A stretch of 64,000 bases of DNA from IMGVR_UViG_3300042302_000394:62001-126000, one strand, 5' to 3'. Shown: positions 21,301-54,061, counted from the stretch's first letter. Numbers and translations: made by a program. Notes: generated by a model not told the origin, from the sequence alone.

Positions 21301-21422
21301 AACAGGTTCTCATTTTATGTGCTACCACTACACCAACACCGCTGACCAAGCAGTGCCCAGGATTCGAACCTGGCCCGTCTTTTTTACAGAAAGTTTAATA
21401 AGATTGCTGAAAAGAACCTAAA
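21301..21422 (-). ncRNA. CAGCAA-motif RNA E1 with permuted tRNA module (anticodon GUA, T, acceptor hairpin, D)
   Basis: TTAGGTTCTTTTCAGCAA...AGAACCTGTT terminal stem; internal CCAGGTTCGAATCCTGG then TGGTGTAGTGGTAGCACA. Confidence 0.75.
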
Positions 21423-21433
21423 TGGTCAAACCA

Positions 21434-21548
21434 TTTGTTATATTGTAGATTTTATCAGTTTATTGTTCTACAACCTCACGACGCCATGGCAGCTATACTG
21501 CCGCACTGCTCGATACCACCTCCCCTTTCAGGGCGTCCGGAATAACAA
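21434..21548 (-). ncRNA. Putative structured RNA
   Basis: TTTGTTAT...ATAACAAA terminal complementarity with internal hairpins. Confidence 0.35.
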
Positions 21549-21553
21549 AATAA

Positions 21554-21673
21554 AACAGGATACCTTTTTCGATGGCTTGGAAGCCATTGCTCTACCATTG
21601 AGCGATCTACGCAAAAGCGTGGAGTTGGAATCGAACCAACATGTCATTTAAGACGTTGCTGCATGTATCCTAA
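21554..21673 (-). ncRNA. CAGCAA-motif RNA E2 with permuted tRNA module (T, acceptor hairpin, D, anticodon-like)
   Basis: TTAGGATACATGCAGCAA...GTATCCTGTT; GTTGGTTCGATTCCAAC then GCTCAATGGTAGAGC. Confidence 0.75.
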
Positions 21674-21676
21674 AAT

Positions 21677-21750
21677 TGGATGCGGGCCCAGGATTTGAAC
21701 CTGGGATGCTCCGAGCTTATGAGACTGGAGTGGTGGCCGCCCTGCCCGCT
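21677..21750 (-). tRNA. tRNA-Met(CAT)-like, degenerate D arm
   Basis: CTCATAA loop, T arm, CCA. Confidence 0.6.
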
Positions 21751-21817
21751 ATATTCTTTGCCACACTACTTATCCTATTATACACCGTGTGCCATGGTGA
21801 ATTCTTTCTTGTATTTA

Positions 21818-21895
21818 TGGTCGGAATAGTAGGATTCGAACCTACGACCCTCGCGTCCCAAACGCGATGCGCTAACCAGACTGCGCTACATTCCG
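21818..21895 (-). tRNA. tRNA-Pro(TGG)
   Basis: Canonical cloverleaf with CCA. Confidence 0.92.
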
Positions 21896-21902
21896 ATTTA
21901 AA

Positions 21903-21978
21903 TGGTACCTGGTGTCAGACTCGAACTGACATCGTTCTCCGTGTAAAGGAGATGCATAACCTCTCTGCGCAACCAGGC
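21903..21978 (-). tRNA. tRNA-Val(TAC)
   Basis: TCTCC-TTTACAC-GGAGA arm, CCA. Confidence 0.88.
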
Positions 21979-21985
21979 AAAAATA

Positions 21986-22059
21986 TGGAGCGGGGTAAGA
22001 GAATCGAACTCTCAGCATGAGCTTGGAAGGCTCAGGTATTACCACTATACGAACCCCGC
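21986..22059 (-). tRNA. tRNA-Gly(TCC)
   Basis: Canonical cloverleaf with CCA. Confidence 0.92.
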
Positions 22060-22062
22060 ATA

Positions 22063-22183
22063 CTTTATTAAAACATACTCCCAACAAGTGTCTTATGCTT
22101 GTTGTACCGTGTGCTAGGCACATTTCCTTTGCAAGGCTCCCCCGGGTTTGGGCTACGTAGACAAAGAATATATTTTAATAAAG
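22063..22183 (-). ncRNA. Structured RNA with long AT-rich terminal helix
   Basis: CTTTATTAAAATATA...TATGTTTTAATAAAG pairing. Confidence 0.5.
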
Positions 22184-22187
22184 TTAC

Positions 22188-22293
22188 CTTATTGAAACAC
22201 ACTGTTGCGGCCGCAGGATACCGAGTGATGTAGTGAGTCGGAATCAAACCTTCCCAATCTACACAGTGCTCTCCACAATGCGTTTCAATAAAG
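22188..22293 (-). ncRNA. Structured RNA with long AT-rich terminal helix
   Basis: TTATTGAAACGCATTGT...ACAGTGTGTTTCAATAA pairing. Confidence 0.5.
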
Positions 22294-22495
22294 TGTCTAG
22301 CTACTCACACCACATGAGCCCTAAACTGGTCTGTTGCTACGTCCATAACATTTTCTTCTTCTGGAAAGGCTGTTAATCCTCACCCTAGGCAGTTTCCAGT
22401 ATCCCTTAAATAGGGACTGTGAGGTCAGGTCCTAGTGTACCCTCTGGTCTATCGTTACAGAGACGCTATTTCGTTACGTAGAAATAGTAAGACGG
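22294..22495 (-). ncRNA. Putative ~200 nt structured RNA
   Basis: Non-coding, GC-richer than flanks, several hairpins, imperfect end pairing. Confidence 0.35.
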
Positions 22496-22501
22496 GTTTT
22501 C

Positions 22502-22566
22502 AACAGGTTAATACTAGTTTAATGACCTAGCAGTCGCCATATTTTTGATAGCTGTAATTAACCTAA
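22502..22566 (-). ncRNA. CAGCAA-motif RNA E3 (short form)
   Basis: TTAGGTTAATTACAGCTA...ATTAACCTGTT. Confidence 0.65.
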
Positions 22567-22571
22567 AAACT

Positions 22572-22646
22572 TGGTGCCCCGTGTCTGAATCGAACAGACG
22601 ATCTCCGCTTTACAAGAGCGGCGCATTGCCACTGTGCTAACAGGGC
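22572..22646 (-). tRNA. tRNA-Thr(TGT)
   Basis: Cloverleaf with CCA. Confidence 0.9.
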
Positions 22647-22655
22647 GCAATATAT

Positions 22656-22922
22656 TTAACCGCCCTGAGTGGAATCACTTACATTCTTTGACTGTTCATC
22701 TGCTAGATATGATGCTAGCTTTGATTGAAAGTCAGCTTCTGTTAGACCATGCCAACCGACACACTTACCAGTCGGACTACGACCACAACCGCATTTTCCA
22801 ATCTCATCTGCATTTTCTTGTACTCTTACTTGCATATCTTTCTTTCCAAAAATAGCGTCATAGTTGTTAGCAAATGTATTCTGGCTAACGCTAAACGGAC
22901 GAGCTCTTGAACCTTTTGACAT
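22656..22922 (-). CDS. CDGSH-like iron-sulfur protein
   Basis: CGCGRSPTGKCVGWH 3Cys-1His motif. Confidence 0.65.
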   Translation of the reverse strand: MSKGSRARPFSVSQNTFANNYDAIFGKKDMQVRVQENADEIGKCGCGRSPTGKCVGWHGLTEADFQSKLASYLADEQSKNVSDSTQGG

Positions 22923-23152
22923 TACCGAACCTTTTTAAGATACTCTCTACCAATTTTACCTGCTTCAATTTCTTGCAAGGCAGTAATAGTGGCACTGTTG
23001 GTTCCGCTAACTTGTTTAGCATGTCCACGTCGCAGTTCGCGAACTCGAGCACTGGCAATCAGAACTAGATCAAATCTATTGCCCACGGCTTCGACACATT
23101 TGTCTGTGTCGATGTTCTGTGGAGAAAAGGGAACTTTAATAACTTTAATCAT
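22922..23152 (-). CDS. rpoZ: RNA polymerase omega subunit homolog
   Basis: NRFDLVLIASARVREL...TALQEIEAGKIG. Confidence 0.85.
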   Translation of the reverse strand: MIKVIKVPFSPQNIDTDKCVEAVGNRFDLVLIASARVRELRRGHAKQVSGTNSATITALQEIEAGKIGREYLKKVR

Positions 23153-23179
23153 CTATTACTTTCGTTGGTTTAAAAAATT

Positions 23180-23255
23180 TGGCTCCCCGGGCAAGGATCG
23201 AACTTGCGACCAACAGATTAACAGTCTGCTGCTACTACCGCTGAGCTACCAGGGA
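23180..23255 (-). tRNA. tRNA-Asn(GTT)
   Basis: Cloverleaf with CCA. Confidence 0.92.
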
Positions 23256-23262
23256 ATATACT

Positions 23263-23436
23263 TTACTTTGCGTCTCGCTCTTTAGAGGATCGCGGAACAA
23301 TGTTCGCAGCCACTTGAGCATCTATCATTGCATTTTTGAATCCATGACGGTCTTGATCGTTCTTAAAACTCATCAATGCTATCATAGTCTTTGCTCTTTT
23401 ACTCAACCTAAAAGTTGAACCTGTTCTTGCTCTCAT
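23263..23436 (-). CDS. Small hypothetical protein (57 aa, MRARTGSTFRLSK)
   Basis: AAGGA RBS, open frame. Confidence 0.5.
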   Translation of the reverse strand: MRARTGSTFRLSKRAKTMIALMSFKNDQDRHGFKNAMIDAQVAANIVPRSSKERDAK

Positions 23437-23457
23437 TTTATTCCTTAAAAAATTTTA

Positions 23458-23532
23458 TGGTGGACCGAGGGAGGATCGAACTCCCACCCGAGGCTTGCAA
23501 AGCCACTGTGCTCCCATTATCACTATCAGCCC
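23458..23532 (-). tRNA. tRNA-Ala(TGC)
   Basis: G3:U70, TGC loop, CCA. Confidence 0.88.
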
Positions 23533-23613
23533 ATATTAAAACACATTTAAACAGTCCTTCAACGCTAGTCGCTATCTCCCCTACTAGAGGGCGGATCTGT
23601 ATGTGTTTTAATA
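23533..23613 (-). ncRNA. Structured RNA with AT-rich terminal helix
   Basis: ATATTAAAACACAT...ATGTGTTTTAATAT perfect inverted ends. Confidence 0.5.
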
Positions 23614-23697
23614 TGGTGCCCCAGGTCGGACTCGAACCGACACGCCTCTCGGCACTGGCTTCTAAGACCAGCGTGGCTACCATTACACCACCGGGGC
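23614..23697 (-). tRNA. tRNA-Leu(TAG)
   Basis: Long variable arm, CCA. Confidence 0.92.
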
Positions 23698-23705
23698 AAA
23701 TTTTT

Positions 23706-23734
23706 ATTATACAGGATATTTATAATCCTGTCAA
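23706..23734 (-). promoter_or_regulatory. sigma70-type promoter with nested TATAAATA
   Basis: TTGACA-N17-TATAAT. Confidence 0.7.
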
Positions 23735-23751
23735 CCTCTATTTTAATAACT

Positions 23752-23828
23752 TGGTGCGCCCACTAGGACTTGAACCTAGGACCAAAGGATTATGAGTCCT
23801 CTGCTCTGACCAACTGAGCTATAGGCGC
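23752..23828 (-). tRNA. tRNA-Met/Ile2(CAT)
   Basis: Canonical cloverleaf, CTCATAA loop. Confidence 0.88.
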
Positions 23829-23837
23829 ATCAATCAT

Positions 23838-23929
23838 TGGTACCAGCGGAGGGGATCGAACCCTCTCAAGAACGCTAATCTGGCGCTAAAAGGTCTATAA
23901 GGCCTCTCTGACTACCAAGTCTCGCTGGC
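23838..23929 (-). tRNA. Atypical tRNA, TAT anticodon, long variable arm
   Basis: 7-bp acceptor, T arm, CCA; CTTATAG loop; 4-nt D loop. Confidence 0.6.
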
Positions 23930-23938
23930 ATGTATGTT

Positions 23939-24028
23939 TGGCGGTGCGACTGAGACTCGAACTCAGAACCCGGATTACGCCGAGCGACGGATTAGCAATC
24001 CGCTCTAATACCATTATAGGACCGCACC
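23939..24028 (-). tRNA. tRNA-Ser(GCT)
   Basis: Long variable arm, G73, CCA. Confidence 0.9.
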
Positions 24029-24037
24029 AAATTTCCA

Positions 24038-24155
24038 TTAGTTGAATCCTCTACACTATATGCCTATCCTCAACACGCTTTACTCGAGTTGACGGTTTAT
24101 TGAATAGGTTACATAACGTATGATCAAACCTCTGTGCTTGCAAAGGATTCAATTA
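24038..24155 (-). ncRNA. Putative structured RNA
   Basis: TTGAATCCT...AGGATTCAA terminal stem between tRNAs. Confidence 0.4.
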
Positions 24156-24156
24156 A

Positions 24157-24240
24157 TGGTGCGAGAGACGGGACTCGAACCCGTATGCCTTTCGGCGGCA
24201 GATTTTAAGTCTGCTGAGTATACCATTTCTCCACTCTCGC
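24157..24240 (-). tRNA. tRNA-Leu(TAA)
   Basis: Long variable arm, CCA. Confidence 0.92.
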
Positions 24241-24257
24241 AAAATACTAACTTTACA

Positions 24258-24326
24258 TTTTTAAAGAACAGTGCTGTTATTAGCAGCGTATGTATAAATT
24301 ATACTGTCTTTCTCAGTGTGTGTCAA
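24258..24326 (-). promoter_or_regulatory. sigma70 promoter followed by hairpin and boxA-like element
   Basis: TTGACA(24326)-N17-TATAAT then TGTTCTTTAAAAA. Confidence 0.65.
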
Positions 24327-24346
24327 CAGGTATTTAAAAATATTTT

Positions 24347-24420
24347 TGGTGCTCAAGCAAAGAATCGAACTTTGATTGCTGTCGTACCAAGACAGTGTAC
24401 TACCATTGTACTACAAGAGC
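24347..24420 (-). tRNA. tRNA-Thr(GGT)
   Basis: Cloverleaf with CCA. Confidence 0.88.
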
Positions 24421-24456
24421 ATTTTTGTGTTATCACTAGGAATCAAATCTAAATGT

Positions 24457-25947
24457 TTATTTTAGAGACATGAGATCATTATAATACGTTTGTACAAACA
24501 AGTGAACTCTATTTTGCCATTCATTGTCTAAGTTGTATTCGCCCCATCGCAGTCTATCTATTTCTTCAACAGTGTATCCAAATTGTAGGACTTCAACTGC
24601 GTTCCAGCCGCCTCTTTTAACATGCGGGGCCGCGCTTTCAGTTAGCAAATTTGTCCATTTTACTACATCTAAAAATGTAAGACCTGATGAATGCTTCCAC
24701 CAAGTTTGTCTCCAGAGACGCTTACCAATAGCGTAAGACTCGGGCAATACCTGTATTATTTCAAATCCATATTTTTCTGCATTACGTTCAAACTCACTAG
24801 TGAATACCGAAGTATCAGGTTTATTAAGTAATAAGGGAATTATTTTCCAGGATGTTATTTTATTATCGACACACCAGTTATGAGTTTCTTTTAAATCATC
24901 TAATGTTTCTGGAGGAATGCCTGCGATAAAACTAAGATGTTCTTTTACTTTTCCCTGCCATCTGTCCTGTAACAAATGAGGCAAATAGTCTTTGGCTTTT
25001 TTTCCGCTAAATGCCTTTCCTACCAAAGCAGATGCATCTTTATTAAAACTTTCTATTCCAAAAAAAGCTCCATAAAGACCGCTTTCCAATAACATATCTT
25101 CAGTATGACGATGAGCCTCAATTAAATCTAATCTTAAATAAGTTGCATATTTAATTTTAAAAGGTAAGGATGATACCATTTTGGCAAATTCTTCCAATCT
25201 TTCGGTGTCTGCATTAAATGTATCGTCTAAAATATAATAATTCGTTGTTCCAAATCTTTCGTAATTGTCAAGTAACTCATCTCTTATATTTTCCATCGGT
25301 TTAAGGAAATCTTTTTTATTTTTTCCAATTAACGGATATTGACAGAATTTACACTTAAAAATGCATCCCCTGGTTGTTTCTAACGGCAATGCTTCATTTG
25401 GCTGTATAGCATCACTGTCATGCCACCTAAAATTACACTGCTCAATTGAAAATCCTTCATTACTTTGATACGAAGATTCTTTTACAATTTTGTAACCGTC
25501 TGCACCTATTTCGACAAATGGCTGTGGACCTTTTTTAAAAATCCAATTGCAAAATTGTAACATTGTATTTTCAGCATGACCTGTAAAATAATAATCAAGT
25601 GTTTTTTTTAATTTTCCTTTAATTATACCAACAGATGGGCCACCGGCTATTATTTTTAAATTTGGATGTTTTGTTTTAAGTTGTTTAATTGCTGAACTGA
25701 ATATAGAAAAGAATACATCGTTAGCTTCTAATAAAATTCCTCCAAGGCCTATAACTTTGGTTTCATCTGTTACAAATTTTTCAAACAGTGCATTTACTTT
25801 ATCCAATGTAAAAATTGGTTCAGAATAATTTATAACCTGTACTGTATAACCAAAGAGTCTTAAATACCAAGCTAATTGGTGACCCCCAATTGATCTAGGA
25901 GCGGCGCCCCGATAATCGCTAATTGTTTGTATAATAATAACATTCAT
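24457..25947 (-). CDS. Radical SAM protein with B12-binding-like N-terminus
   Basis: ETTRGCIFKCKFC, DDTFN, FGIES; paralog of 12239-13771. Confidence 0.85.
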   Translation of the reverse strand: MNVIIIQTISDYRGAAPRSIGGHQLAWYLRLFGYTVQVINYSEPIFTLDKVNALFEKFVTDETKVIGLGGILLEANDVFFSIFSSAIKQLKTKHPNLKIIAGGPSVGIIKGKLKKTLDYYFTGHAENTMLQFCNWIFKKGPQPFVEIGADGYKIVKESSYQSNEGFSIEQCNFRWHDSDAIQPNEALPLETTRGCIFKCKFCQYPLIGKNKKDFLKPMENIRDELLDNYERFGTTNYYILDDTFNADTERLEEFAKMVSSLPFKIKYATYLRLDLIEAHRHTEDMLLESGLYGAFFGIESFNKDASALVGKAFSGKKAKDYLPHLLQDRWQGKVKEHLSFIAGIPPETLDDLKETHNWCVDNKITSWKIIPLLLNKPDTSVFTSEFERNAEKYGFEIIQVLPESYAIGKRLWRQTWWKHSSGLTFLDVVKWTNLLTESAAPHVKRGGWNAVEVLQFGYTVEEIDRLRWGEYNLDNEWQNRVHLFVQTYYNDLMSLK

Positions 25948-25987
25948 AATAGTAAACAAATATTTATCATTAACTGTATATAAAACT

Positions 25988-26062
25988 TGGTCCCGCCAGT
26001 AGGAATCGAACCTACATTTAAGTCTTAGGAGGACCCCGTACTATCCATTGTACTATAGCGAG
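25988..26062 (-). tRNA. tRNA-Arg(CCT)
   Basis: Cloverleaf with CCA. Confidence 0.88.
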
Positions 26063-26065
26063 ATA

Positions 26066-26140
26066 TGGCCGGTCTTGAGAGGATCGAACTCCCACCCTCG
26101 GTTTCGAAGACCGAGATGATATCCATTTCACCAAAGACCG
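26066..26140 (-). tRNA. tRNA-Arg(TCG)
   Basis: Cloverleaf with CCA. Confidence 0.88.
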
Positions 26141-26145
26141 ATATG

Positions 26146-26220
26146 TGGTACCGCCTACAGGAATCGAACCCATATTCGCAGGGTAGAAGCCTGCCGTATT
26201 ATCCATTATACGAAAGCGGT
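26146..26220 (-). tRNA. tRNA-Arg(TCT)
   Basis: GCAGG-CTTCTAC-CCTGC arm, CCA. Confidence 0.88.
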
Positions 26221-26221
26221 G

Positions 26222-26311
26222 TGGCAGTGAGTGAGAGATTCGAACTCTCGTGCCCCTTACGGAACCATCACCTTTCCAAGATGCGCCAATAGGCCTCTCT
26301 GGCAACTCACT
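26222..26311 (-). tRNA. tRNA-Ser(GGA)
   Basis: Long variable arm, CCA. Confidence 0.85.
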
Positions 26312-26317
26312 ATTGTT

Positions 26318-26395
26318 TGGTACCCCTGACCGGATTCGAACCGGTACTTGACAATGTTTAAGACTGTTGCCTGCTACCAATTGGGCTACAGGGGC
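26318..26395 (-). tRNA. tRNA with TAA anticodon and short variable loop (Leu?)
   Basis: ACAGT-CTTAAAC-ATTGT arm, CCA. Confidence 0.75.
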
Positions 26396-26403
26396 AAATA
26401 GGT

Positions 26404-26550
26404 TTTTGAGAGACCAGCTATCTTTCTCAAGGACTCACTGGCTTGTCTCGTATGAAGGAGTTTAAACTACCTTGTGTTGCTACTGGTGTGTCAGTCTCAA
26501 GAATAGGGACCTAGCGCACAAGGGACTCTACTTCAACGTCTATCTCAAAA
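26404..26550 (-). ncRNA. Putative structured RNA
   Basis: TTTTGAGA...TCTCAAAA terminal stem; shares AAGTAGAGTC...CTAGGT with 27118-27327. Confidence 0.45.
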
Positions 26551-26552
26551 CT

Positions 26553-26628
26553 TGGCGTCCCATAGCGGATTCGAACCGCTGTAAATACCGTGAAAGGGTA
26601 CTATCCTAGGCCTCTAGATGAATGGGAC
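26553..26628 (-). tRNA. tRNA-Glu(TTC)
   Basis: Cloverleaf with CCA. Confidence 0.9.
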
Positions 26629-26633
26629 ATGTT

Positions 26634-26708
26634 TGGTAGTAACGGTGAGATTCGAACTCACACCGGGCACCGTATGAAGGTGTTGCACAACCATTATGCT
26701 ACGTTACC
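26634..26708 (-). tRNA. tRNA-Met(CAT)
   Basis: Cloverleaf with CCA. Confidence 0.85.
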
Positions 26709-26799
26709 ATATCAAAACACACTAGCGGAATCGAACCGTTACGCCTCCTGCACTACGTGAGGAAGCGGATGCCCACACTAGTTCTAGTGAGCTTTGATA
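26709..26799 (-). ncRNA. Structured RNA with AT-rich terminal helix and T-loop
   Basis: ATATCAAAGCTCACTAG...CTAGTGTGTTTTGATAT; internal CGGTTCGATTCCG. Confidence 0.5.
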
Positions 26800-26877
26800 T
26801 GGTAGGACTGTCCGGATTCGAACCGGAACCTGGCGGATTAAAAGTCCGCTGTGCTAAACCGTTGACACTACAATCCC
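26800..26877 (-). tRNA. tRNA-Lys(TTT)
   Basis: Cloverleaf with CCA. Confidence 0.9.
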
Positions 26878-26882
26878 ATATA

Positions 26883-26959
26883 TGGTCCCTAGCGTCAGAT
26901 TCGAACTGACACCTCATCGGTTAAGAGCCGAGTACGCTACCGTTAAACGCCAGCTAGGG
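26883..26959 (-). tRNA. tRNA-Lys(CTT)
   Basis: Cloverleaf with CCA. Confidence 0.85.
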
Positions 26960-27078
26960 TTGTTGCATATTAAATTTGTCTTTAATGTGCCAACCCTAGA
27001 CCATATACGGGATCTAAGATTGACACTATCGTTTACCTGAACGTTTCATGTCATTACCTCTTTTGTGTTTAAGTTTCT

Positions 27079-27107
27079 ATTATACAACCTTTTAGGGTAG
27101 TTGTCAA
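27079..27107 (-). promoter_or_regulatory. sigma70-type promoter
   Basis: TTGACA-N17-TATAAT. Confidence 0.7.
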
Positions 27108-27117
27108 CCGCATTGAA

Positions 27118-27327
27118 TTTGTAAGCTGTTGCGTCCCTCATATCGCAACCATTTTCCCTTGTAATAAAGCCGGCAGGGTCAAGATACGTCACTTGGGCTT
27201 TGTCCAGACGATACTCCAACTGTATTCCGATCTTCCGATCGGACGGGGATCGAACCCGCTACCTTCTACTGTTTTGGTAGTTCGAACATACCTAGACAGC
27301 GTGACTCTACTTGCTGACACTTACAAA
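27118..27327 (-). ncRNA. Variant CAGCAA-motif RNA with permuted tRNA module
   Basis: TTTGTAAGTGTCAGCAA...CTTACAAA; CGGGTTCGATCCCCG, TCCGATC-GGAA-GATCGGA, ATAC-AGTTGGA-GTAT. Confidence 0.65.
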
Positions 27328-27330
27328 ACT

Positions 27331-27408
27331 TGGTGGACGATAGTGGAATCGAACCACTGTCACGGCAGGGTTGCTACCGCCTGTTATCCTTTACAACAGT
27401 CATCGCCC
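27331..27408 (-). tRNA. Atypical Ala-like tRNA
   Basis: G3:U70, A73, CCA, T arm; 8-nt anticodon loop. Confidence 0.55.
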
Positions 27409-27415
27409 ATTAACT

Positions 27416-27490
27416 TGGTGCCCACATATGGAATCGAACCACAATCCCCGGTTTCGTAGACCAGTGTATTATCCATTATACTATGCGGGC
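27416..27490 (-). tRNA. tRNA-Arg(ACG)
   Basis: Cloverleaf with CCA. Confidence 0.9.
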
Positions 27491-27496
27491 AAATAA

Positions 27497-27559
27497 AACA
27501 GGATAGCATTTTTGGTTTCATTAACAGTGAAATTTTTGATTTTGCTGTTGCTATCCTAA
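27497..27559 (-). ncRNA. CAGCAA-motif RNA E4 carrying an Asn(GUU) anticodon arm
   Basis: TTAGGATAGCAACAGCAA...TTTCA-CTGTTAA-TGAAA...TGCTATCCTGTT. Confidence 0.75.
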
Positions 27560-27621
27560 AAATTTGTGCTGGGTAGGTGCTCCAGCGCCGATCGTCTTGA
27601 TATTATCTCACGGCCCTTGTT

Positions 27622-27697
27622 TGGTGCCACAAACTGGACTCGAACCAGTAACACACGAATTTTCAATCCGCTGCTCTACCATTGGAGCTATTGTGGC
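27622..27697 (-). tRNA. tRNA-Phe(GAA)
   Basis: Cloverleaf with CCA. Confidence 0.9.
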
Positions 27698-27705
27698 AAA
27701 ATGTT

Positions 27706-27780
27706 TGGTGGAGGCCGGGGGTATCGAACCCCTCTAGTCACGATGCTTGCAAGGCAACGCCGCAGCCCTCTGCTGCCCCC
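27706..27780 (-). tRNA. tRNA-Ala(TGC), reduced D arm
   Basis: G3:U70, CTTGCAA loop, CCA. Confidence 0.65.
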
Positions 27781-27789
27781 AAATTGTAT

Positions 27790-27868
27790 TGGCTCCGTGT
27801 GTGAGGATCGAACTCACCTAATCATTGATTAACAGTCAAGTCCTTGCACCATGCTTGGATTTCACGGA
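27790..27868 (-). tRNA. tRNA-Asn(GTT)
   Basis: CTGTTAA loop, CCA. Confidence 0.8.
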
Positions 27869-27876
27869 ATAAATTT

Positions 27877-27951
27877 TGGCGATCCTGCGGGGAATCGAAC
27901 CCCGATATCCGACTAGACAGGCCGGTATAATAACCACTATATGACAGGACC
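27877..27951 (-). tRNA. tRNA-Asp(GTC)
   Basis: Cloverleaf with CCA. Confidence 0.88.
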
Positions 27952-27958
27952 ATTAACT

Positions 27959-28045
27959 TGGTGGAGACGACTGGAGTCGAACCAGTAGTGCCTTTCGGGC
28001 GGCGGATTTACAGTCCACTGGGGTTACCAATTTTCCTACATCTCC
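27959..28045 (-). tRNA. tRNA-Tyr(GTA)
   Basis: Long variable arm, CCA. Confidence 0.9.
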
Positions 28046-28051
28046 ATAACT

Positions 28052-28127
28052 TGGCGCCACAGACGGGAATCGAACCCGCCTAAATCGGATAGACAATCCG
28101 GTGCCCTACCCAGAGGACTACTGTGGC
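28052..28127 (-). tRNA. tRNA-Asp(GTC)
   Basis: Cloverleaf with CCA. Confidence 0.85.
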
Positions 28128-28132
28128 AAAAC

Positions 28133-28231
28133 TAATAACACAAGCATAACATTAACCAGTTATGCCTGCCACTCTCATCCCTCGCTGGCAGGGAGACTGA
28201 ATGCCATCCTACAGTGCGTTGAGTGTTGTTA
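28133..28231 (-). ncRNA. Putative structured RNA
   Basis: TAACAACAC...GTGTTATTA terminal pairing between tRNAs. Confidence 0.35.
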
Positions 28232-28234
28232 ACT

Positions 28235-28311
28235 TGGTACTCCGTACGGGACTCGAACCCGTTTTTCCAACTTGAAAGGCTAGCGTCCTAAACCACGTAG
28301 ACGAACGAAGT
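28235..28311 (-). tRNA. tRNA-Glu(TTC)
   Basis: Cloverleaf with CCA. Confidence 0.85.
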
Positions 28312-28315
28312 AAAA

Positions 28316-28428
28316 TTCTTATACAACTACACACTCACAGGACTCGAACCTGCCAACTGGACTTCTCGTCCAGCTAGATACCACCTCTATCTGCTTGGCC
28401 TAAGCATTTGTGTGTATGTGTATAAGAA
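28316..28428 (-). ncRNA. tRNA-like multi-hairpin RNA with extended terminal helix
   Basis: TTCTTATACA...TGTATAAGAA ends; GCAGGTTCGAGTCCTGT T arm; no CCA. Confidence 0.5.
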
Positions 28429-28445
28429 CTTCTTATACTGTAAAT

Positions 28446-28516
28446 TTTTAAAGAACATTTACATCTAATTGCTTAGTGTATGTGTTAATTATAGCAAGGT
28501 TTTACCTCCTTGTCAA
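28446..28516 (-). promoter_or_regulatory. sigma70 promoter followed by boxA-like element
   Basis: TTGACA(28516)-N17-TATAAT then TGTTCTTTAAAAA. Confidence 0.65.
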
Positions 28517-28559
28517 TAGTCTTTGCAACTATTTTTGTTGTATTTTAACAACACTATTA

Positions 28560-28625
28560 AACAGGATACTGTTTGCTTTTCACAGCCAAAAAGTGAAATA
28601 TTTTGGTTTGCTGTAAGTATCCTAA
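28560..28625 (-). ncRNA. CAGCAA-motif RNA E5
   Basis: TTAGGATACTTACAGCAA...TTTCAC-TTTTTGGCT-GTGAAA...AGTATCCTGTT. Confidence 0.7.
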
Positions 28626-28627
28626 AC

Positions 28628-28701
28628 TGGTGCGGGGTAAGGGAATCGAACCCTTAACTACTGGGTGGAAGCCAGTGATCTTACCATTAAACGAACCACG
28701 C
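28628..28701 (-). tRNA. tRNA-Gly(TCC)
   Basis: ACTGG-CTTCCAC-CCAGT arm, CCA. Confidence 0.82.
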
Positions 28702-28791
28702 ATAAACTTGGCCCTCGAGGTGTATGTCGCAGTACACATTACTAACTATTGGCAAGGGTGTATACGGCCCCGCTTAACTCAAGGATAAAAT

Positions 28792-28867
28792 TGGTGCAAC
28801 CTGTAGGGATCGAACCTACTTCAATGGCTCTTCAGACCACCGCTATGACCACATCAGCTAAAGTTGC
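28792..28867 (-). tRNA. tRNA-Phe(GAA)
   Basis: Cloverleaf with CCA. Confidence 0.85.
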
Positions 28868-28874
28868 ATTGTAT

Positions 28875-28950
28875 TGGTGCCCCAGTCCGGAATCGAACCG
28901 ACTTCCCCTGCTTACAAGACAGGACCTCATCCATTAAAGGCTTCAAGGGC
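28875..28950 (-). tRNA. tRNA-Thr(TGT)
   Basis: Cloverleaf with CCA. Confidence 0.82.
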
Positions 28951-28957
28951 AATAAAC

Positions 28958-29034
28958 TGGAACATCGGGTGGGACTCGAACCCACGACTGGACGGATTTG
29001 CAATCCGCTACATTGGCCGCTCTGTCACCGATGC
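28958..29034 (-). tRNA. tRNA-Cys(GCA)
   Basis: U73, CCA. Confidence 0.88.
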
Positions 29035-29040
29035 ATAAAC

Positions 29041-29119: not shown

Positions 29120-29126
29120 ATAAAAT

Positions 29127-29201: not shown

Positions 29202-29206
29202 ATAAA

Positions 29207-29926: not shown

Positions 29927-29929
29927 AAC

Positions 29930-51694: not shown

Positions 51695-52100
51695 AAAGTA
51701 TTTATGGTTTACAGCCGGTATCCTATTTCTAGGAATCGCATACATTGGAGTCATAGTGCCGGGAATCCCGTGGAGCACACCTAGTTTAATTGCTGCCTAT
51801 TGTTTTGCTCGAAGTAGCGAAAGATTTCATAACTATATGCTCAATCACAAATTGTTTGGTCCGTTCATTACTAACTGGCGTGACGGGAAAGTTTACCCAA
51901 CTAAGGTAAAATGGATCATGTTTATCTGCATGGATGCTAGTTTAGTTATTATGTGGTTTGCTACACAGAACTGGAAAGCTGTAGCAGGTATGGGCGTATT
52001 CTTTGCATTGGTACTATTGTGGGCCAGTCGTTATCCAGGTAGCAAAGAAGAAAGCGACCGTAGAAAGGCTGCTGGCGAAAAGATCGGTTGGTTTAAGTAA
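51678..52100 (+). CDS. YbaN/DUF454 membrane protein
   Basis: GVIVPGIP.STP...AYCFARSSERFH...FGPFI. Confidence 0.8.
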   Translation: MFTKIKKYLWFTAGILFLGIAYIGVIVPGIPWSTPSLIAAYCFARSSERFHNYMLNHKLFGPFITNWRDGKVYPTKVKWIMFICMDASLVIMWFATQNWKAVAGMGVFFALVLLWASRYPGSKEESDRRKAAGEKIGWFK

Positions 52101-52102
52101 CC

Positions 52103-52131
52103 AAAAAAAAGGACTCCTAAGAGTCCTTTTA
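52103..52131. terminator. Bidirectional intrinsic terminator
   Basis: AAAAAAAAGGACTC-CTAA-GAGTCCTTTT between convergent genes. Confidence 0.65.
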
Positions 52132-52137
52132 AAACAC

Positions 52138-53535
52138 TTACGCTATTACAGCGTAACGTGGAGCGTTGATTGTAGCCAACATTACATTGACTGGATCCAA
52201 CGATTCGGCGCTTAGGATGCTCTTCATGATAGCAGGGCTGAATCCGCTAACAAGGGCAACACCCTTCTTGTCATGCTTAACTGGAACGTTGCCAGCACGA
52301 GCATTCAAGTTCCAGAATACAATGTTGGGAACAGTGTATCCTGCCGCTTCATACTTACGAGCGATCATTTCCATTGCCGAGTCGTCGTGACGAGCACAGT
52401 AATTGAATTCCATATCACTCATGATAAGGATATACTTTGGCATATCCTTTGCATCAACATTGCCCTTGACTGCGAAGTCAAGCACAGTGTTAAATGCGGC
52501 GTGTAGATTAGTACTCATGTCCCATTCTGCACGTTGTAGTTGAGCCAACTTGCTCAACAGGTTACCCTTCAAGATTTCGATCTTGCTCTTGGTAGAGAAG
52601 GTCAAAAACATGTCCTTGAATGGACCAGTGTTCTTGTCAGCAAGGTACAAGCCCAAACTAACGCAAACATCCATACAGGTCAAGTTAGCGTTTCCGCCAA
52701 CTGGAGAGCTCATAGAGCCAGACACGTCACACATTGGCAACACCAGTTCATCACCGATGTAGTTTGGCAATGCATCCCATTGTGCTTGCACAACAGTGGC
52801 GTCACCACCAAACTTGTGGCTCTTGATAACGTCATATGGGTAAACAGCCGAAGCGTTAACCTTTGCGTCACCAGTAACCAACTTTGCCTTGTAAGCATCA
52901 TAGCCTACAGGGTCGTGCTTCTTAAAAGCCTTTTGGTATCGAGCAGCCGCCAACGATGGTACGTGGCTATAGTTGATGTCATCCCAAGTGTTTGCACACA
53001 TGTTCTGTTCAACTGTCTTGCTCAAGTTAACCAAACTCTTACGGTAGAACTTTGGGCTCATTCCGAAGAAGGTGCGGATTTCAGCAGCCAACGCACCTTG
53101 ACGTGGCATCCACTTTGCGGCCAGCCCGTTGCTTGCACGTAGCGCATCACCGATTAGGGTAAATGCTTGTGCCTTCACTTCCTTAGAAGTAAAGATCAAC
53201 AGGTCGTCCCAACGACCGAATTCAGCCAGGTGTGGCAAAATACGGGCAAGCGCCTTAGGGTTGGTCTTTTCAAGATTCAAAAGAATCTTACGAACAACTT
53301 CACGTTCGCCTGCACCACCACGGACGTCACGAGCCCACATCAAAAGACGTAGAGCAAGAGTTTCGTCTTGTGCTAGTGCGCGAGCAAACTGAGTGCTCAA
53401 ATCCTTACCACGGCTTGCACCAATGGCAAAGAACAAATCTACAAGATCACTCTTGCTAGATTCAAAAGTCTTCATACCGTTTGCGGTACGAGATTCAACT
53501 GGAACGGACTTAACCGCTTCTACAAATGCGTTCAT
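52138..53535 (-). CDS. DUF2828-type TROVE-like/vWA protein (Ro60-related)
   Basis: RDVRGGAGER, GRWDD, AKWMPR, DVSGSM MIDAS, SDMEF, FWNL, VSGFSP. Confidence 0.8.
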   Translation of the reverse strand: MNAFVEAVKSVPVESRTANGMKTFESSKSDLVDLFFAIGASRGKDLSTQFARALAQDETLALRLLMWARDVRGGAGEREVVRKILLNLEKTNPKALARILPHLAEFGRWDDLLIFTSKEVKAQAFTLIGDALRASNGLAAKWMPRQGALAAEIRTFFGMSPKFYRKSLVNLSKTVEQNMCANTWDDINYSHVPSLAAARYQKAFKKHDPVGYDAYKAKLVTGDAKVNASAVYPYDVIKSHKFGGDATVVQAQWDALPNYIGDELVLPMCDVSGSMSSPVGGNANLTCMDVCVSLGLYLADKNTGPFKDMFLTFSTKSKIEILKGNLLSKLAQLQRAEWDMSTNLHAAFNTVLDFAVKGNVDAKDMPKYILIMSDMEFNYCARHDDSAMEMIARKYEAAGYTVPNIVFWNLNARAGNVPVKHDKKGVALVSGFSPAIMKSILSAESLDPVNVMLATINAPRYAVIA

Positions 53536-53547
53536 TTTATTTTCCTT

Positions 53548-53590
53548 CAGGTTACTTTTAAATTAAAAAATTTTGCTGTATATAACCTAT
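53548..53590 (-). promoter_or_regulatory. CAGCAA-motif copy A abutting RBS of DUF2828 gene
   Basis: ATAGGTTATATACAGCAA...TAACCTG-AAGGA-AAATAAA-ATG. Confidence 0.65.
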
Positions 53591-53593
53591 ACA

Positions 53594-53835
53594 AGCAGGA
53601 TGGGTGTGCCAATTTGTTTATTTTCTGGTCTGGCCAATTATAGCACCCAGACCCTATCGACAATTCATGTTGACTATCTAAACTTGTGTCTGCGTTAGAA
53701 ACATACAAAGTCTTTCCCTTGTGTCATCCATTCCTTGAGTGTCTAGTTTCCTAGAACAGTATCTCCACTGTGTCCTACAACCACTTTCTATGGCATTTAA
53801 CTTTAGTATTGTTTTAATTGCTGAATCCATCCTAG
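53594..53835 (-). ncRNA. CAGCAA-motif RNA B (long form)
   Basis: CTAGGATGGATTCAGCAA...CCATCCTGCT; TTGAAC-N17-TATAAT immediately upstream. Confidence 0.65.
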
Positions 53836-53893
53836 GATCAATTATAGCACACGTTCGTCTGAGGTTCAATTCAGTTGTAGTGCTATAAAATAA

Positions 53894-54061
53894 AACAGGT
53901 TAGTTGTCGGCTGCTTTTATTCAACTCAGGCCACCACTCTGAGCTCGCTAGTCTATTTCAATGTTGACTCTTCAACGCACTCGGTCAAGACTCTGTGCTC
54001 CAATTCAACACCATAGGGTCTAGCAGTCCATATTAAATGAAAATTGCTGCACCTAACCTAA
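53894..54061 (-). ncRNA. CAGCAA-motif RNA C (long form)
   Basis: TTAGGTTAGGTGCAGCAA...CTAACCTGTT; shares internal GACTGCTAG with E3. Confidence 0.65.

What the first reader, a model, noticed from the sequence alone, without database searches (positions are those of the whole stretch)
21301..54061. Family of 10-11 small RNAs with a covarying stem and UAGG-N7-CAGC(A/U)A motif, linked to a DUF2828 TROVE-like/vWA gene
Seen in sequence: ten minus-strand elements begin TAGG-N7-CAGCWA and end with the complement of the stem followed by CCTG. Positions: 21301-21422, 21554-21673, 22502-22566, 27497-27559, 28560-28625, 29867-29926, 30012-30076, 53548-53590, 53594-53835, 53894-54061, plus a variant at 27118-27327. 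Stem sequence changes compensate (GGTTCT/AGAACC, GGATAC/GTATCC, GGATGC/GCATCC, GGTTAG/CTAACC, GGATGG/CCATCC) while the N7 spacing is invariant. Interiors range from about 20 to about 215 nt. Seven copies lie in the tRNA array, mostly right after a tRNA CCA, and three are in tandem directly upstream of the 465 aa DUF2828-type gene 23 kb away. Established: Ro60/Rsr (TROVE plus vWA) proteins bind Y RNAs through a terminal stem, and bacterial YrlA RNAs carry a tRNA-like module. Inference: a modular RNP in which the DUF2828 protein grips a constant handle and displays variable RNA cargo. The handle differs from the canonical Y RNA bulged helix, so this may be an undescribed Ro-like system.
Basis: partly seen in the sequence, partly recalled or inferred. 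Interest (0 to 1): 0.92.

Follow-up and report, generated by a model that had tools for sequence, protein, structure and literature searches.

The report
Phage Ro-like protein with tRNA-mimic RNAs
A large phage encodes a distant relative of the Ro60 RNA-binding ring protein together with eleven small RNAs that share one constant "handle" and carry tRNA-like pieces, and the same unrecognised protein and RNA pairing recurs across the distantly related phage groups sampled.

Summary
TAGG-N7-CAGCWA occurs 10 times, all on the minus strand, against 0.29 expected. Every copy is closed by the complementary strand followed by UG, and an eleventh variant lies at 27119-27326.

The elements form a real RNA family. 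It has a 7-bp terminal helix (99.5% paired, all 7 pairs with compensatory changes), a 3-nt linker, single-stranded CAGCAA, a variable body and a 3' UG.

The family tracks the DUF2828/DUF7788 gene. In 1.2 Mb around homologues, a covariance model finds 103 copies, all on the gene strand. In 1.2 Mb of control phage DNA it finds 7, all beside the gene or in tRNA arrays. The pairing recurs in Felix O1-like, KVP40, Listeria, Staphylococcus, Enterococcus, Bacillus, Campylobacter, Fusobacterium and mycobacteriophage genomes.

The protein model's only full-length structural match is human Ro60.

RNA bodies mimic tRNA parts. The roughly 115-nt class has a T-arm, a closed acceptor hairpin and a D-arm. 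About a third of the short ones carry an anticodon-like hairpin.

No Rfam family matches at threshold. The sub-threshold hits are YrlA and Dictyostelium Class I RNA.

Verdict: a new variant of the Ro/Y-RNA kind. Binding and function are untested.

The parts
52138..53535 (-). Gene for the 465-aa DUF2828 + DUF7788 (vWA) protein, a Ro60-like putative RNA-binding ring protein
   Evidence: Pfam PF11443 at 7e-30 and PF25043 at 1.5e-51. PHROG 850 'RNA-binding protein' at 3.7e-150. AF2 model with Foldseek top hits Ro60 9nfa_A and 9nf8_A. MIDAS residues D270, S272 and S274 are invariant.
53548..53588 (-). Mini handle RNA or operator. It has the handle and an ~16-nt body and ends 12 nt before the start codon, abutting the Shine-Dalgarno sequence. 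Candidate autoregulatory site.
   Evidence: It was not used to train the covariance model yet scores 33.3 bits, E 4e-5. It is conserved at about -66 to -50 in relatives.
53596..53833 (-). Handle RNA of the ~235-nt class, with its own promoter
   Evidence: Its position and length are conserved in relatives with 57-100% protein identity, and the stems covary (GGATGG, GGATGA, GGATAG).
53841..53869 (-). Sigma-70-type promoter (10/12 plus extended -10 TG). It places the transcription start at about 53834, the 5' end of the handle.
53896..54059 (-). Handle RNA of the ~160-nt class, with a conserved structured body
   Evidence: An alignment of 19 orthologues shows a covarying internal helix.
54096..54124 (-). 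Perfect 12/12 sigma-70-type promoter upstream of the three tandem RNAs and the gene
21303..21419 (-). Handle RNA of the tRNA-like class. Order: anticodon-like hairpin (loop CUGUAAA), T-arm, closed acceptor-like hairpin, D-arm.
   Evidence: The consensus fold across phyla has 19 of 22 pairs with compensatory changes.
21556..21671 (-). Handle RNA of the tRNA-like class in the YrlA-type order: T-arm, closed acceptor hairpin, D-arm, then an anticodon-like arm with loop UUCCAAG. It starts 5 nt after the called end (CCA) of tRNA-Met.
   Evidence: Full-length but sub-threshold match to Rfam YrlA RF02553, 29.3 bits against a gathering score of 69. MFE fold.
22504..22564 (-). Short handle RNA with the CAGCUA variant, directly after tRNA-Thr
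   Evidence: Covariance model 33.6 bits.
27119..27326 (-). Variant handle RNA. Stem UUGUAAG/CUUACAA, then UGU and CAGCAA, with a T-arm-like body. It ends in AA instead of UG.
   Evidence: Read directly from the sequence. It is not recovered by the regex or the model, so membership is probable rather than certain.
27499..27557 (-). Short handle RNA whose body is a 5-bp hairpin with loop CUGUUAA (Asn GUU-like)
   Evidence: Covariance model 52.5 bits.
28562..28623 (-). Short handle RNA directly after tRNA-Gly
   Evidence: Covariance model 49.6 bits. Dicty_Class_I_RNA 29.4 bits.
29869..29924 (-). Short handle RNA directly after tRNA-Trp, with a 5-bp hairpin and loop CUUUUAA (Lys UUU-like)
   Evidence: Covariance model 52.9 bits. 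Dicty_Class_I_RNA 29.4 bits.
30014..30074 (-). Short handle RNA after a CCA end
   Evidence: Covariance model 48.8 bits. Dicty_Class_I_RNA 24.3 bits.
21070..30415 (-). Array of 39 tRNA genes that hosts eight of the RNAs. It is driven by several perfect sigma-70-type promoters.

Best explanation
The window encodes a phage version of the Ro60/Y-RNA ribonucleoprotein, built from a divergent Ro60 paralogue and its own class of partner RNAs.

Shown by computation:
- The 465-aa DUF2828/DUF7788 protein has the Ro60 architecture: a helical repeat region plus a vWA domain with a MIDAS site.
- Eleven small RNAs share a constant module and a variable body. The constant module is a 7-bp helix joining the 5' and 3' ends, a 3-nt linker (usually xUA), single-stranded CAGCAA and an unpaired 3' G. 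The body is 16 to 215 nt.
- The RNA genes lie either next to the protein gene or inside tRNA arrays, always on the transcribed strand.
- Many bodies copy tRNA parts. One form is a permuted tRNA with a T-arm, a capped acceptor hairpin, a D-arm and an anticodon-like hairpin. Another is an anticodon-like 5-bp/7-nt hairpin alone.

Inferred:
- The protein grips the constant module and displays the body.
- The RNAs in the array are transcribed with the tRNAs from host-type promoters. They are cut out by the enzymes that trim tRNA 3' trailers, because each copy starts and ends in the same U-rich spacer that follows tRNA CCA ends.
- The mini copy that abuts the ribosome-binding site of the protein gene lets the protein repress its own translation.
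- The particle works in the conflict over tRNAs. It acts as a decoy or tether for tRNA-directed nucleases, or for repair and decay enzymes, and so helps the phage overcome host defence.
For: RNA family. The motif occurs 10 times against 0.29 expected, on one strand only, and all copies are closed by the complement plus UG. A covariance model built from 50 short copies of diverse phages finds 103 copies at E<=0.01 in 1.2 Mb around DUF2828 genes, all on the gene strand. The helix is 99.5% paired and all 7 pairs show compensatory changes: 193 double-change cells against 45.9 in shuffles, and 29-41% paired when the partner is slid.

Linkage to the gene.
- A generic stem scan gives 225 hits on the gene strand, 16 on the opposite strand and 10 in shuffles.
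- A triplet is conserved at about -480, -305 and -66 in relatives.
- The same handle with unrelated stem sequences lies beside the gene in KVP40, wV8, Faith1 and Listeria LMSP-25. It also lies beside the gene in Campylobacter F372, Enterococcus EFDG1, Staphylococcus S-CoN_Ph6, Bacillus PK-3 and Fusobacterium Fnu1.
- It is also present in 22 of 33 genome or MAG contigs, down to 31% protein identity.
- In 1.2 Mb of control DNA anchored on NAMPT genes there are only 7 hits. Three are in a locus that contains the gene, and the other four (three in L180, one in L195) lie in tRNA arrays directly after a tRNA.

Protein. The AF2 model has pLDDT 78.7. The Foldseek top hits are Ro60 at E 5e-6 and TM 0.52/0.47 over the full length, and all other hits cover the vWA domain only. 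The MIDAS motif is invariant. A profile search gives weak hits to phage TROVE structures.

tRNA mimicry. There is a full-length sub-threshold YrlA match, and EFDG1 reaches 44.9 bits. The cross-phylum consensus fold has 19 of 22 pairs with compensatory changes. Seven-nt loops are enriched: 24 against 3.8 expected, and 45 of 123 interiors against 14.3.

Context. RtcB or RNA ligase genes are nearby in Listeria and Yersinia phages. Promoters are placed at the RNA 5' ends.

Literature. Bas63 gp130 is Ro60-like, lies upstream of the tRNA genes and counters the Ppl defence system (PMC11482910). Canonical Ro60 binds Y RNAs encoded next to its gene, in phages as well (PMC4201824, PMC12135203).
Against: No binding, expression or processing data exist for any of these RNAs. 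That Bas63 gp130 is the DUF2828 homologue is inferred from genus and gene position, not checked.

The protein does not match the TROVE Pfam family by sequence, and its structural match to Ro60 is moderate (TM about 0.5, 10% identity).

The handle has none of the features that canonical Ro60 recognises (a bulged helix or CGAA motif), so the binding mode cannot be carried over.

In the jumbo Eneladusvirus phages (Yersinia fHe-Yen9-04, Serratia BF) no handle RNA was found near the gene.

Only about a third of the short RNAs have an anticodon-like hairpin. AU-rich composition inflates U and A at loop positions.

The covariation counts come from alignments selected for, or fitted to, the helix.
Confidence: 0.75

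Rival explanations
1. The elements are RNA-processing or punctuation signals of polycistronic tRNA transcripts. They would be nuclease entry sites or terminator-like hairpins, not stable RNAs bound by DUF2828.
For: Most copies lie in tRNA arrays right after a CCA end. They end in the same U-rich spacer as the tRNAs.
Against: No terminator-like site coincides with any element. The invariant part is a single-stranded hexamer, not a cleavage-type helix. The bodies are conserved structured domains, tRNA-like or the 160-nt class. Copies stand beside DUF2828 genes where the surveyed flank shows no adjacent tRNA array, as in Faith1, Staphylococcus and Fusobacterium phages. Some have their own promoters.
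Confidence: 0.07
2. The elements are cis-regulatory leaders or operators of the DUF2828 gene only, and the copies in the tRNA array are incidental or titrating sites.
For: The proximal copy ends 12 nt before the start codon. In KVP40 the 3' strand of the handle includes the start codon.
Against: In Faith1, wV8, Staphylococcus phage and several MAG contigs the RNAs lie downstream of the gene. In the window eight copies are 23 kb away. The large conserved bodies are unnecessary for an operator. This reading probably holds for the proximal mini copy and is compatible with the main explanation.
Confidence: 0.1
3. The tRNA-like copies are circularly permuted tRNA genes, and the handle is a splicing or circularisation motif. 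They would be matured into working tRNAs by ligation (RtcB) and end processing.
For: All four tRNA arms occur in permuted order, with recognisable anticodon-like loops. RtcB or RNA ligase genes are close by in some phages.
Against: The acceptor-like stem is capped by a 4-6 nt loop and no CCA is encoded. Bacteria have no bulge-helix-bulge splicing endonuclease (general knowledge). Most family members (the short, 160-nt and 235-nt classes) have no tRNA body yet share the same handle. YrlA shows the same layout and is a mimic, not a tRNA (PMC4201824).
Confidence: 0.04
4. The elements are a repeat or mobile-element family, such as miniature inverted-repeat elements or homing sites, that spreads within phage genomes.
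For: There are multiple copies per genome with short inverted termini.
Against: Strand polarity is strict, 103 to 0. The termini covary instead of being conserved. The same architecture appears in phages of different bacterial phyla at the same place relative to one gene. No transposase was seen and no target duplication was looked for.
Confidence: 0.02

Closest known systems
Ro60 (TROVE + vWA) with Y RNAs, especially bacterial and phage Rsr with YrlA (Rfam RF02553; Chen et al. 2014, PMC4201824; Thermus phage phiLo phiRo60 with Yrl1/2, PMC12135203)
   Same: The overall protein architecture is shared (Foldseek top hit Ro60), as is the vWA MIDAS motif. The RNA genes lie next to the protein gene, often several in tandem. 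RNA ends are joined in a terminal helix. One RNA class carries a permuted tRNA-like domain with a T-arm, a capped acceptor and a D-arm. RtcB or RNA ligase is nearby in some genomes.
   Different: There is no sequence match to the TROVE domain. The RNAs score 29-45 bits against a gathering score of 69. The constant module is a plain 7-bp helix plus single-stranded CAGCAA, not the bulged helix or CGAA motif. Further cargo classes exist: anticodon-hairpin minis of 45-65 nt, and 160-nt and 235-nt bodies. Many copies are embedded in tRNA arrays.
Dictyostelium Class I RNAs (Rfam RF01414; Kjellin et al. 2021, PMC7919456)
   Same: Both are 42-65 nt with a short covarying stem that joins the 5' and 3' ends. 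Both have a conserved motif directly 3' of the 5' stem strand: CCUUACAGCAA in Dictyostelium and xUACAGCAA in the phages. Both have a variable AU-rich body and end in stem-UG(U). Three window RNAs align over the full model at 24-29 bits.
   Different: The scores are below the gathering score of 41.5. The spacing from stem to CAGCAA is 1 nt shorter. The eukaryotic RNAs have a DUSE promoter and a known binder, the RRM protein Rnp1A. The RNAs have been reported only in Dictyostelia. In a 65-kb scan of eight distant phage loci only one short RNA reached E<5. Common descent is therefore unproven, and whether dictyostelids have a DUF2828 protein could not be tested here.
DUF2828 / DUF7788 family (Pfam PF11443, PF25043; PHROG 850 'RNA-binding protein'; 'Ro-like RNA binding protein' in mycobacteriophage records; Bas63 gp130 in PMC11482910)
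   Same: The window protein is a full member. Homologues occur in 710 phage records and 6264 clusters at 50% identity. Giant viruses have the same fold.
   Different: None of these sources names an RNA partner. The preprint only guessed that some annotated tRNA genes might be Y RNAs.

Membership tests
DUF2828/DUF7788 protein family (PF11443 + PF25043; PHROG 850) | Significant match to the family profiles over the whole protein | tested here: met
   PF25043 175 bits and PF11443 105 bits, both above their cut-offs. PHROG 850 at 3.7e-150, covering residues 1-462.
Ro60 / TROVE proteins | Sequence match to the TROVE domain | tested here: not met
   Pfam lists only DUF2828 and DUF7788 at E<=0.1. A profile search against PDB gives TROVE chains only at E 0.47, in the MIDAS region.
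Ro60 / TROVE proteins | Helical-repeat region followed by a vWA domain with a MIDAS site, the same overall fold as Ro60 | tested here: met
   AF2 model pLDDT 78.7. Foldseek PDB hits 9nfa_A and 9nf8_A (Ro60) at E 5e-6 and 4e-5, TM 0.52/0.47 over the full length; the next hits cover the vWA domain only at TM<=0.25. D270, S272 and S274 are invariant. Ring closure itself was not measured.
Ro60 / TROVE proteins | Binds small RNAs encoded next to its gene | not testable with these tools
   Co-location is shown. Binding needs EMSA or RIP-seq.
YrlA / bacterial Y RNA (RF02553) | Score at or above the Rfam gathering score (69 bits) | tested here: not met
   Window 21554-21671 scores 29.3 bits. The best relative, EFDG1, scores 44.9 bits.
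YrlA / bacterial Y RNA (RF02553) | Terminal helix of the 5' and 3' ends plus a tRNA-like domain (T-arm, capped acceptor, D-arm) | tested here: met
   Met for the ~115-nt class only: and the consensus fold with 19 of 22 compensatory pairs. The short, 160-nt and 235-nt classes lack the tRNA-like domain.
YrlA / bacterial Y RNA (RF02553) | Canonical Ro-binding site (conserved bulged helix or CGAA-type motif) in the stem | tested here: not met
   The constant module is an uninterrupted 7-bp helix, a 3-nt linker and CAGCAA. The Rfam alignment shows the inner YrlA stem unpaired in the window RNA.
Dictyostelium Class I RNA (RF01414) | Score at or above the Rfam gathering score (41.5 bits) | tested here: not met
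   29.4, 29.4 and 24.3 bits, each over the full model length.
Dictyostelium Class I RNA (RF01414) | 42-65 nt, a short terminal stem, a conserved motif ending in CAGCAA next to the 5' stem strand, and a 3' CUGU | tested here: met
   The short class is 45-70 nt. The consensus is A-GGAUxx-xUA-CAGCAA...xxAUCC-UG-U. The family definition was taken from PMC7919456. The spacing differs by 1 nt.
Dictyostelium Class I RNA (RF01414) | Dictyostelid origin with a DUSE promoter | tested here: not met
   The elements here lie in a phage contig behind sigma-70-type promoters.
Intrinsic terminators | GC-rich hairpin with a short loop followed by a U run | tested here: not met
   No terminator-like site lies at any element. 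The 'loops' are 16-215 nt.
Circularly permuted tRNA genes | Acceptor ends that can be opened to give a 5' end and a CCA-bearing 3' end, plus a splicing motif at the permuted termini | tested here: inconclusive
   The arms are in permuted order, but the acceptor is capped by 4-6 nt and no CCA is encoded. Maturation cannot be tested in silico.

The most novel reading that the evidence does not exclude
The phage handle (terminal helix, xUA-CAGCAA, 3' UG) may be the same module that defines the Class I RNAs of Dictyostelium, whose function and motif reader are unknown. On this reading, DUF2828-type Ro paralogues are the missing reader. Such proteins also occur in giant viruses, some of them in amoeba-infecting lineages, and in plants. 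Phage handle RNAs and Class I RNAs would then be one ancient ribonucleoprotein family spanning viruses of bacteria and eukaryotes. In phages it would serve as a display platform for tRNA mimics that neutralise tRNA-targeting immunity. The commonest anticodon-like loops are Lys UUU, Thr UGU and Asn GUU, the three tRNAs cleaved by the PARIS effector AriB.
Probability: 0.2. Interest if true: 0.95.

Novelty: new variant of a known kind. Interest (0 to 1): 0.82.

Why it matters
Ro60 and Y RNAs are a classic but still poorly understood particle. This finding defines a second, much larger viral branch of it: 710 phage records and more than 6000 protein clusters. The branch has a simple, searchable RNA signature, and the partner RNAs have gone unannotated or been called as tiny ORFs.

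It gives a concrete RNA partner to a protein family that a genetic screen already tied to anti-defence, assuming the screen's Bas63 gp130 is a member of it. It shows that phage tRNA arrays contain a hidden class of tRNA mimics. It suggests a testable decoy or tether mechanism in the conflict over tRNAs.

The system is directly tractable in laboratory phages such as Felix O1-like Bas63, KVP40 and Listeria A511/P100-like phages.

It also offers the first lead outside Dictyostelia for the conserved motif of Class I RNAs.

Tried and rejected
- Megablast of the gene region against GenBank phages found nothing. The window comes from an uncultured IMG/VR phage of about 208 kb.
- Rfam at gathering thresholds found only tRNAs. 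The 53.4-54.2 kb RNAs match no family even at E<=10.
- A single-sequence search of PDB gave nothing useful.
- NCBIfam has no model for the protein.
- A weak covariance-model hit at 33405-33505 and regex hits at 34012-34174 and 1340-1565 lie inside ORFs and lack the flanking A/UG features, so they were treated as chance.
- The AAA ATPase, NAMPT and other neighbours of the gene are not syntenic with it in relatives. A metallophosphoesterase is often nearby but not fixed.
- I could not reach eukaryotic DUF2828 sequences. The protein searches list only the best phage-like hits, and no eukaryotic genome collection is on hand, so the Dictyostelium question stays open.
- The paper that reported the four Class I RNA-associated proteins is not in the library.
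- Bas63 itself was not among the listed Felixounavirus rows. Equating gp130 with the DUF2828 homologue therefore rests on the genus and on its described position just upstream of the tRNA genes.
- One Rfam call was run without alignments and added little.

Full report
**1. The observation**

The pattern TAGG-N7-CAGCWA occurs 10 times in the window, always on the minus strand. Dinucleotide-preserving shuffles give 0.29 on average and at most 2.

I read the sequence and searched for the closing strand. Nine copies have a perfect 6-nt complement followed by TG. The tenth, 53548-53588, pairs with one G.U. The stems differ between copies in a compensating way.

The stated positions, the body lengths (about 16 to 215 nt) and the layout are all correct. 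The array holds 39 tRNAs. Seven canonical copies and one variant (27119-27326) lie in it. Three copies stand in tandem directly upstream of the 465-aa ORF at 52138-53535. That ORF is a DUF2828 + DUF7788 protein.

**2. It is a real RNA family with a covarying helix**

I wrote a generic scan: any 6-nt stem, N3, CAGCWA, the stem complement, then TG. I ran it over 80 IMG/VR loci that encode homologues with 57-100% identity. It gave 225 hits on the gene strand, 16 on the other strand and 10 in shuffled sequence.

The hits form a conserved triplet upstream of the gene, at about -480 (~160 nt), -305 (~235 nt) and -66 (~52 nt). The stems change between clades.

A covariance model was built from 50 short copies of diverse phages.
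- In the window it recovers the short copies, including one not used for training (53548-53588, 33.3 bits).
- In 1.2 Mb of DUF2828-anchored DNA it finds 103 copies at E<=0.01. Every one is on the gene strand.
- On that alignment the 7-bp helix is 99.5% paired and all seven pairs show compensatory changes. There are 193 double-change cells against 45.9 in shuffles, and sliding the partner gives 29-41% pairing.

One caveat applies: the copies were selected for, or fitted to, the helix. The strand bias and the controls in section 3 are therefore the stronger argument.

The consensus of the constant module is U-rich spacer, A, GGAUxx, xUA, CAGCAA, body, xxAUCC, U, G, U-rich spacer.

**3. It travels with the DUF2828 gene across phage groups**

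tblastn finds the protein in 710 of 50,697 phage records. The groups include:
- Felix O1-like phages, KVP40 and Aeh1, and several jumbo phages;
- phages of Listeria, Staphylococcus, Enterococcus, Bacillus, Campylobacter and Fusobacterium;
- cluster-L-type mycobacteriophages.

In the nine distant genomes below, the same handle lies within a few hundred bases of the gene, with completely different stem sequences.

| Phage | Handle RNAs near the gene |
|---|---|
| KVP40 | Stem GACAUU; one copy overlaps the start codon |
| wV8 | Four copies in the tRNA array just downstream |
| Faith1 | Three copies just downstream |
| Listeria LMSP-25 | Three copies just upstream |
| Campylobacter F372 | Two copies |
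| Enterococcus EFDG1 | Three copies, one with CAGCGA |
| Staphylococcus S-CoN_Ph6 | Three copies |
| Bacillus PK-3 | Five copies |
| Fusobacterium Fnu1 | One copy |

The handle also occurs in 22 of 33 contigs from the species-genome collection, down to 31% protein identity. Most of those are MAG contigs that look phage-derived.

As a control I fetched 1.2 Mb of viral DNA anchored on the window's NAMPT gene. The model finds only 7 hits there. Three are in a locus that also contains the DUF2828 gene. The other four (three in L180, one in L195) are in tRNA arrays directly after a tRNA. Nothing was found elsewhere.

The exception is the jumbo Eneladusvirus group. No handle RNA lies within 3 kb of the gene in Yersinia phage fHe-Yen9-04, and Serratia phage BF has no room for one upstream.

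**4. The protein is Ro60-like**

An AlphaFold2 model built from 23 homologues has pLDDT 78.7 and pTM 0.72. It shows a helical N-terminal two-thirds and an alpha/beta C-terminal third.

Against the PDB, the only full-length matches are two cryo-EM structures of human Ro60 (E 5e-6 and 4e-5, TM 0.52/0.47). All other hits align to the vWA domain alone, at TM 0.25 or less. The MIDAS DxSxS motif is invariant.

By sequence there is no TROVE match. A profile search touches the Thermus phage phiRo60 chains only at E 0.47.

In BFVD the fold recurs in phages and in giant viruses. The hits include Pithovirus LCPAC304 (TM 0.79), Marseillevirus LCMAC202, Mimiviridae ChoanoV1 and Bodo saltans virus.

The family is PHROG 850 'RNA-binding protein' and comprises 6264 clusters at 50% identity.

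**5. The cargo mimics tRNA**

Rfam gives no match at threshold. Below threshold, 21554-21671 aligns over the whole YrlA model at 29.3 bits against a gathering score of 69. The order is terminal stem, T-arm, capped acceptor, D-arm.

The ~115-nt class from the window, E. coli, Mycobacterium, Enterococcus and Bacillus phages folds into one consensus. It comprises the handle helix, a T-arm with GGUUCGAnnCC, a capped 6-bp hairpin and a D-arm-like hairpin. Nineteen of 22 pairs show compensatory changes.

In the members inspected, the hairpin before the T-arm has a 7-nt loop of the form CU-NNN-AA, for example CUGUAAA in 21303-21419. These RNAs are therefore whole tRNAs in circularly permuted order, with a capped acceptor end and no CCA.

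Among short RNAs, hairpins with 7-nt loops are enriched. In 79 diverse copies there are 24 against 3.8 expected. In 123 unique interiors, 45 have at least 5 bp closing a 7-nt loop, against 14.3 in shuffles. Position 33 is U in 31 of those 45 and position 37 is A in 32.

The commonest loops read as Lys UUU, Thr UGU and Asn GUU. These are the three tRNAs reported as targets of the PARIS nuclease AriB (PMC12409363). This is a correlation only, and AU-rich composition contributes to it.

The 160-nt class has a conserved body with a covarying helix and no known family match. The 235-nt class is conserved in place and length.

**6. Transcription and processing**

A perfect sigma-70-type promoter precedes the tandem RNAs (54124-54096). 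A second one, with an extended -10, places the start at about the first base of the 235-nt RNA. Five more perfect promoters drive the tRNA array. No terminator-like site coincides with any element.

In the window's array, copies begin 3-5 nt after a tRNA CCA end and finish in the same U-rich spacer that follows tRNAs; relatives show the same placement directly after a tRNA. I therefore infer that they are released by the tRNA 3'-trailer processing enzymes.

The proximal mini copy ends at the Shine-Dalgarno sequence of the gene, and in KVP40 it covers the start codon. This suggests translational autoregulation, which is also an inference.

**7. What is already known**

Canonical Ro60 with adjacent YrlA RNAs is known in bacteria and some phages (PMC4201824). 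A Thermus phage Ro60 with two upstream Y-like RNAs carrying a CGAA motif has been solved (PMC12135203).

For DUF2828 I found only annotation-level statements and one preprint. The statements are 'Ro-like RNA binding protein' and 'RNA-binding protein'. In the preprint, Bas63 gp130 is Ro60-like by predicted structure, lies just upstream of the tRNA genes and counters the Ppl defence system. Its authors guess that some annotated tRNAs might be Y RNAs (PMC11482910).

Only five papers mention DUF2828 at all. No paper in the library describes a CAGCAA-type phage RNA.

**8. The Dictyostelium lead**

Three short window RNAs align over the full Rfam model of Dictyostelium Class I RNA, at 29.4, 29.4 and 24.3 bits against a gathering score of 41.5.

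The published definition of that class almost describes the short phage class. It specifies 42-65 nt, a short covarying terminal stem, the conserved motif CCUUACAGCAA next to the 5' stem strand, a variable body and a 3' CUGU (PMC7919456). The phage consensus is xUACAGCAA with a spacing 1 nt shorter.

The resemblance is weaker in other phage lineages under the Rfam model. I could not test whether dictyostelids encode a DUF2828 protein.

The family does occur in giant viruses, some from amoeba-infecting lineages, and in plants. I treat this as a lead, not a membership.

**9. Verdict**

The thing is a Ro60-like ribonucleoprotein system with a new partner-RNA family. I rate it a new variant of a known kind. 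It is widespread and experimentally accessible.

Binding, RNA ends, the autoregulatory role and the anti-defence or decoy function are inferences that simple laboratory-phage experiments can settle.

Noticed in passing
window 27499-27557, 29869-29924; many loci (e.g. L034:3522-3579, L051:1308-1363, L088:305-370): The bodies of many short handle RNAs are 5-bp hairpins with 7-nt loops of anticodon-loop form (C-U-NNN-A-A). The commonest read Lys UUU, Thr UGU and Asn GUU, the same three tRNAs reported as targets of the PARIS nuclease AriB.
   Followed up: partly
L084 (Listeria phage LMSP-25) 2470-3021: A ROOL RNA (88.5 bits against a gathering score of 99.1) lies between the tRNA genes and the three handle RNAs, just upstream of the DUF2828 gene. 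An RtcB-type ligase gene lies 1.3 kb downstream.
   Followed up: no
L086 (Enterococcus phage EFDG1) 2400-2810: Each of the three tandem handle RNAs is preceded by a conserved ~35-nt segment with a GUUCC...GGAAC hairpin ending in CAUAA. It may be a processing or promoter signal. The middle RNA has CAGCGA instead of CAGCAA and the best YrlA score seen (44.9 bits).
   Followed up: partly
L087 (Staphylococcus phage S-CoN_Ph6) 4519-4866; L082 (wV8) 6332-6589: Handle RNAs are annotated as, or overlapped by, tiny hypothetical CDSs in GenBank records. The RNA family is therefore being mis-annotated as protein-coding.
   Followed up: no
L089 (Yersinia phage fHe-Yen9-04), L204 (Serratia phage BF): Jumbo Eneladusvirus phages have the DUF2828 gene (about 47% identity) but no canonical handle RNA within 3 kb. 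Yersinia has a promoter-driven hairpin upstream (AUGGAU...AUCCAU with GUGCAU in place of CAGCAA). Several jumbo-phage homologues are annotated 'structural protein', which hints at packaging into virions.
   Followed up: partly
window 30080-30200, 27700-27870, 30243-30330: tRNA-like sequences with T-arms and CCA ends that ARAGORN does not call. One scores 33.9 bits as tRNA-Sec-like in Rfam. The array may hold more unconventional tRNA-like genes.
   Followed up: no
window 29207-29608 (-): A PD-(D/E)XK endonuclease (PDDEXK_5) ORF sits inside the tRNA array. It may be a homing-type endonuclease.
   Followed up: no
window 37219-44965 (-): A curli-related cluster in a phage: CsgG, a curlin-repeat protein with an F5/8 type C domain, and a FecR-domain protein. 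A CHASE2-adenylate/guanylate cyclase lies next to it.
   Followed up: no
window 47238-48426, 55347-58802, 12239-19290, 24457-25959, 33007-34089: Many auxiliary metabolic genes are present. They include heme oxygenase with a ferredoxin-dependent bilin reductase, NAMPT with an NMNAT-NUDIX fusion (NAD salvage), three radical-SAM proteins, and QueC-like PP-loop proteins.
   Followed up: no
L180 2185-2258, L142 3615-3691: Related phages carry a tRNA with anticodon CUA, an amber suppressor that ARAGORN labels Pyl. None was seen in the window.
   Followed up: no
window 23706-30232 (-): Five perfect 12/12 TTGACA-17-TATAAT promoters lie within the tRNA array and one lies upstream of the DUF2828 RNAs. 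This implies strong host-polymerase transcription in several units.
   Followed up: partly
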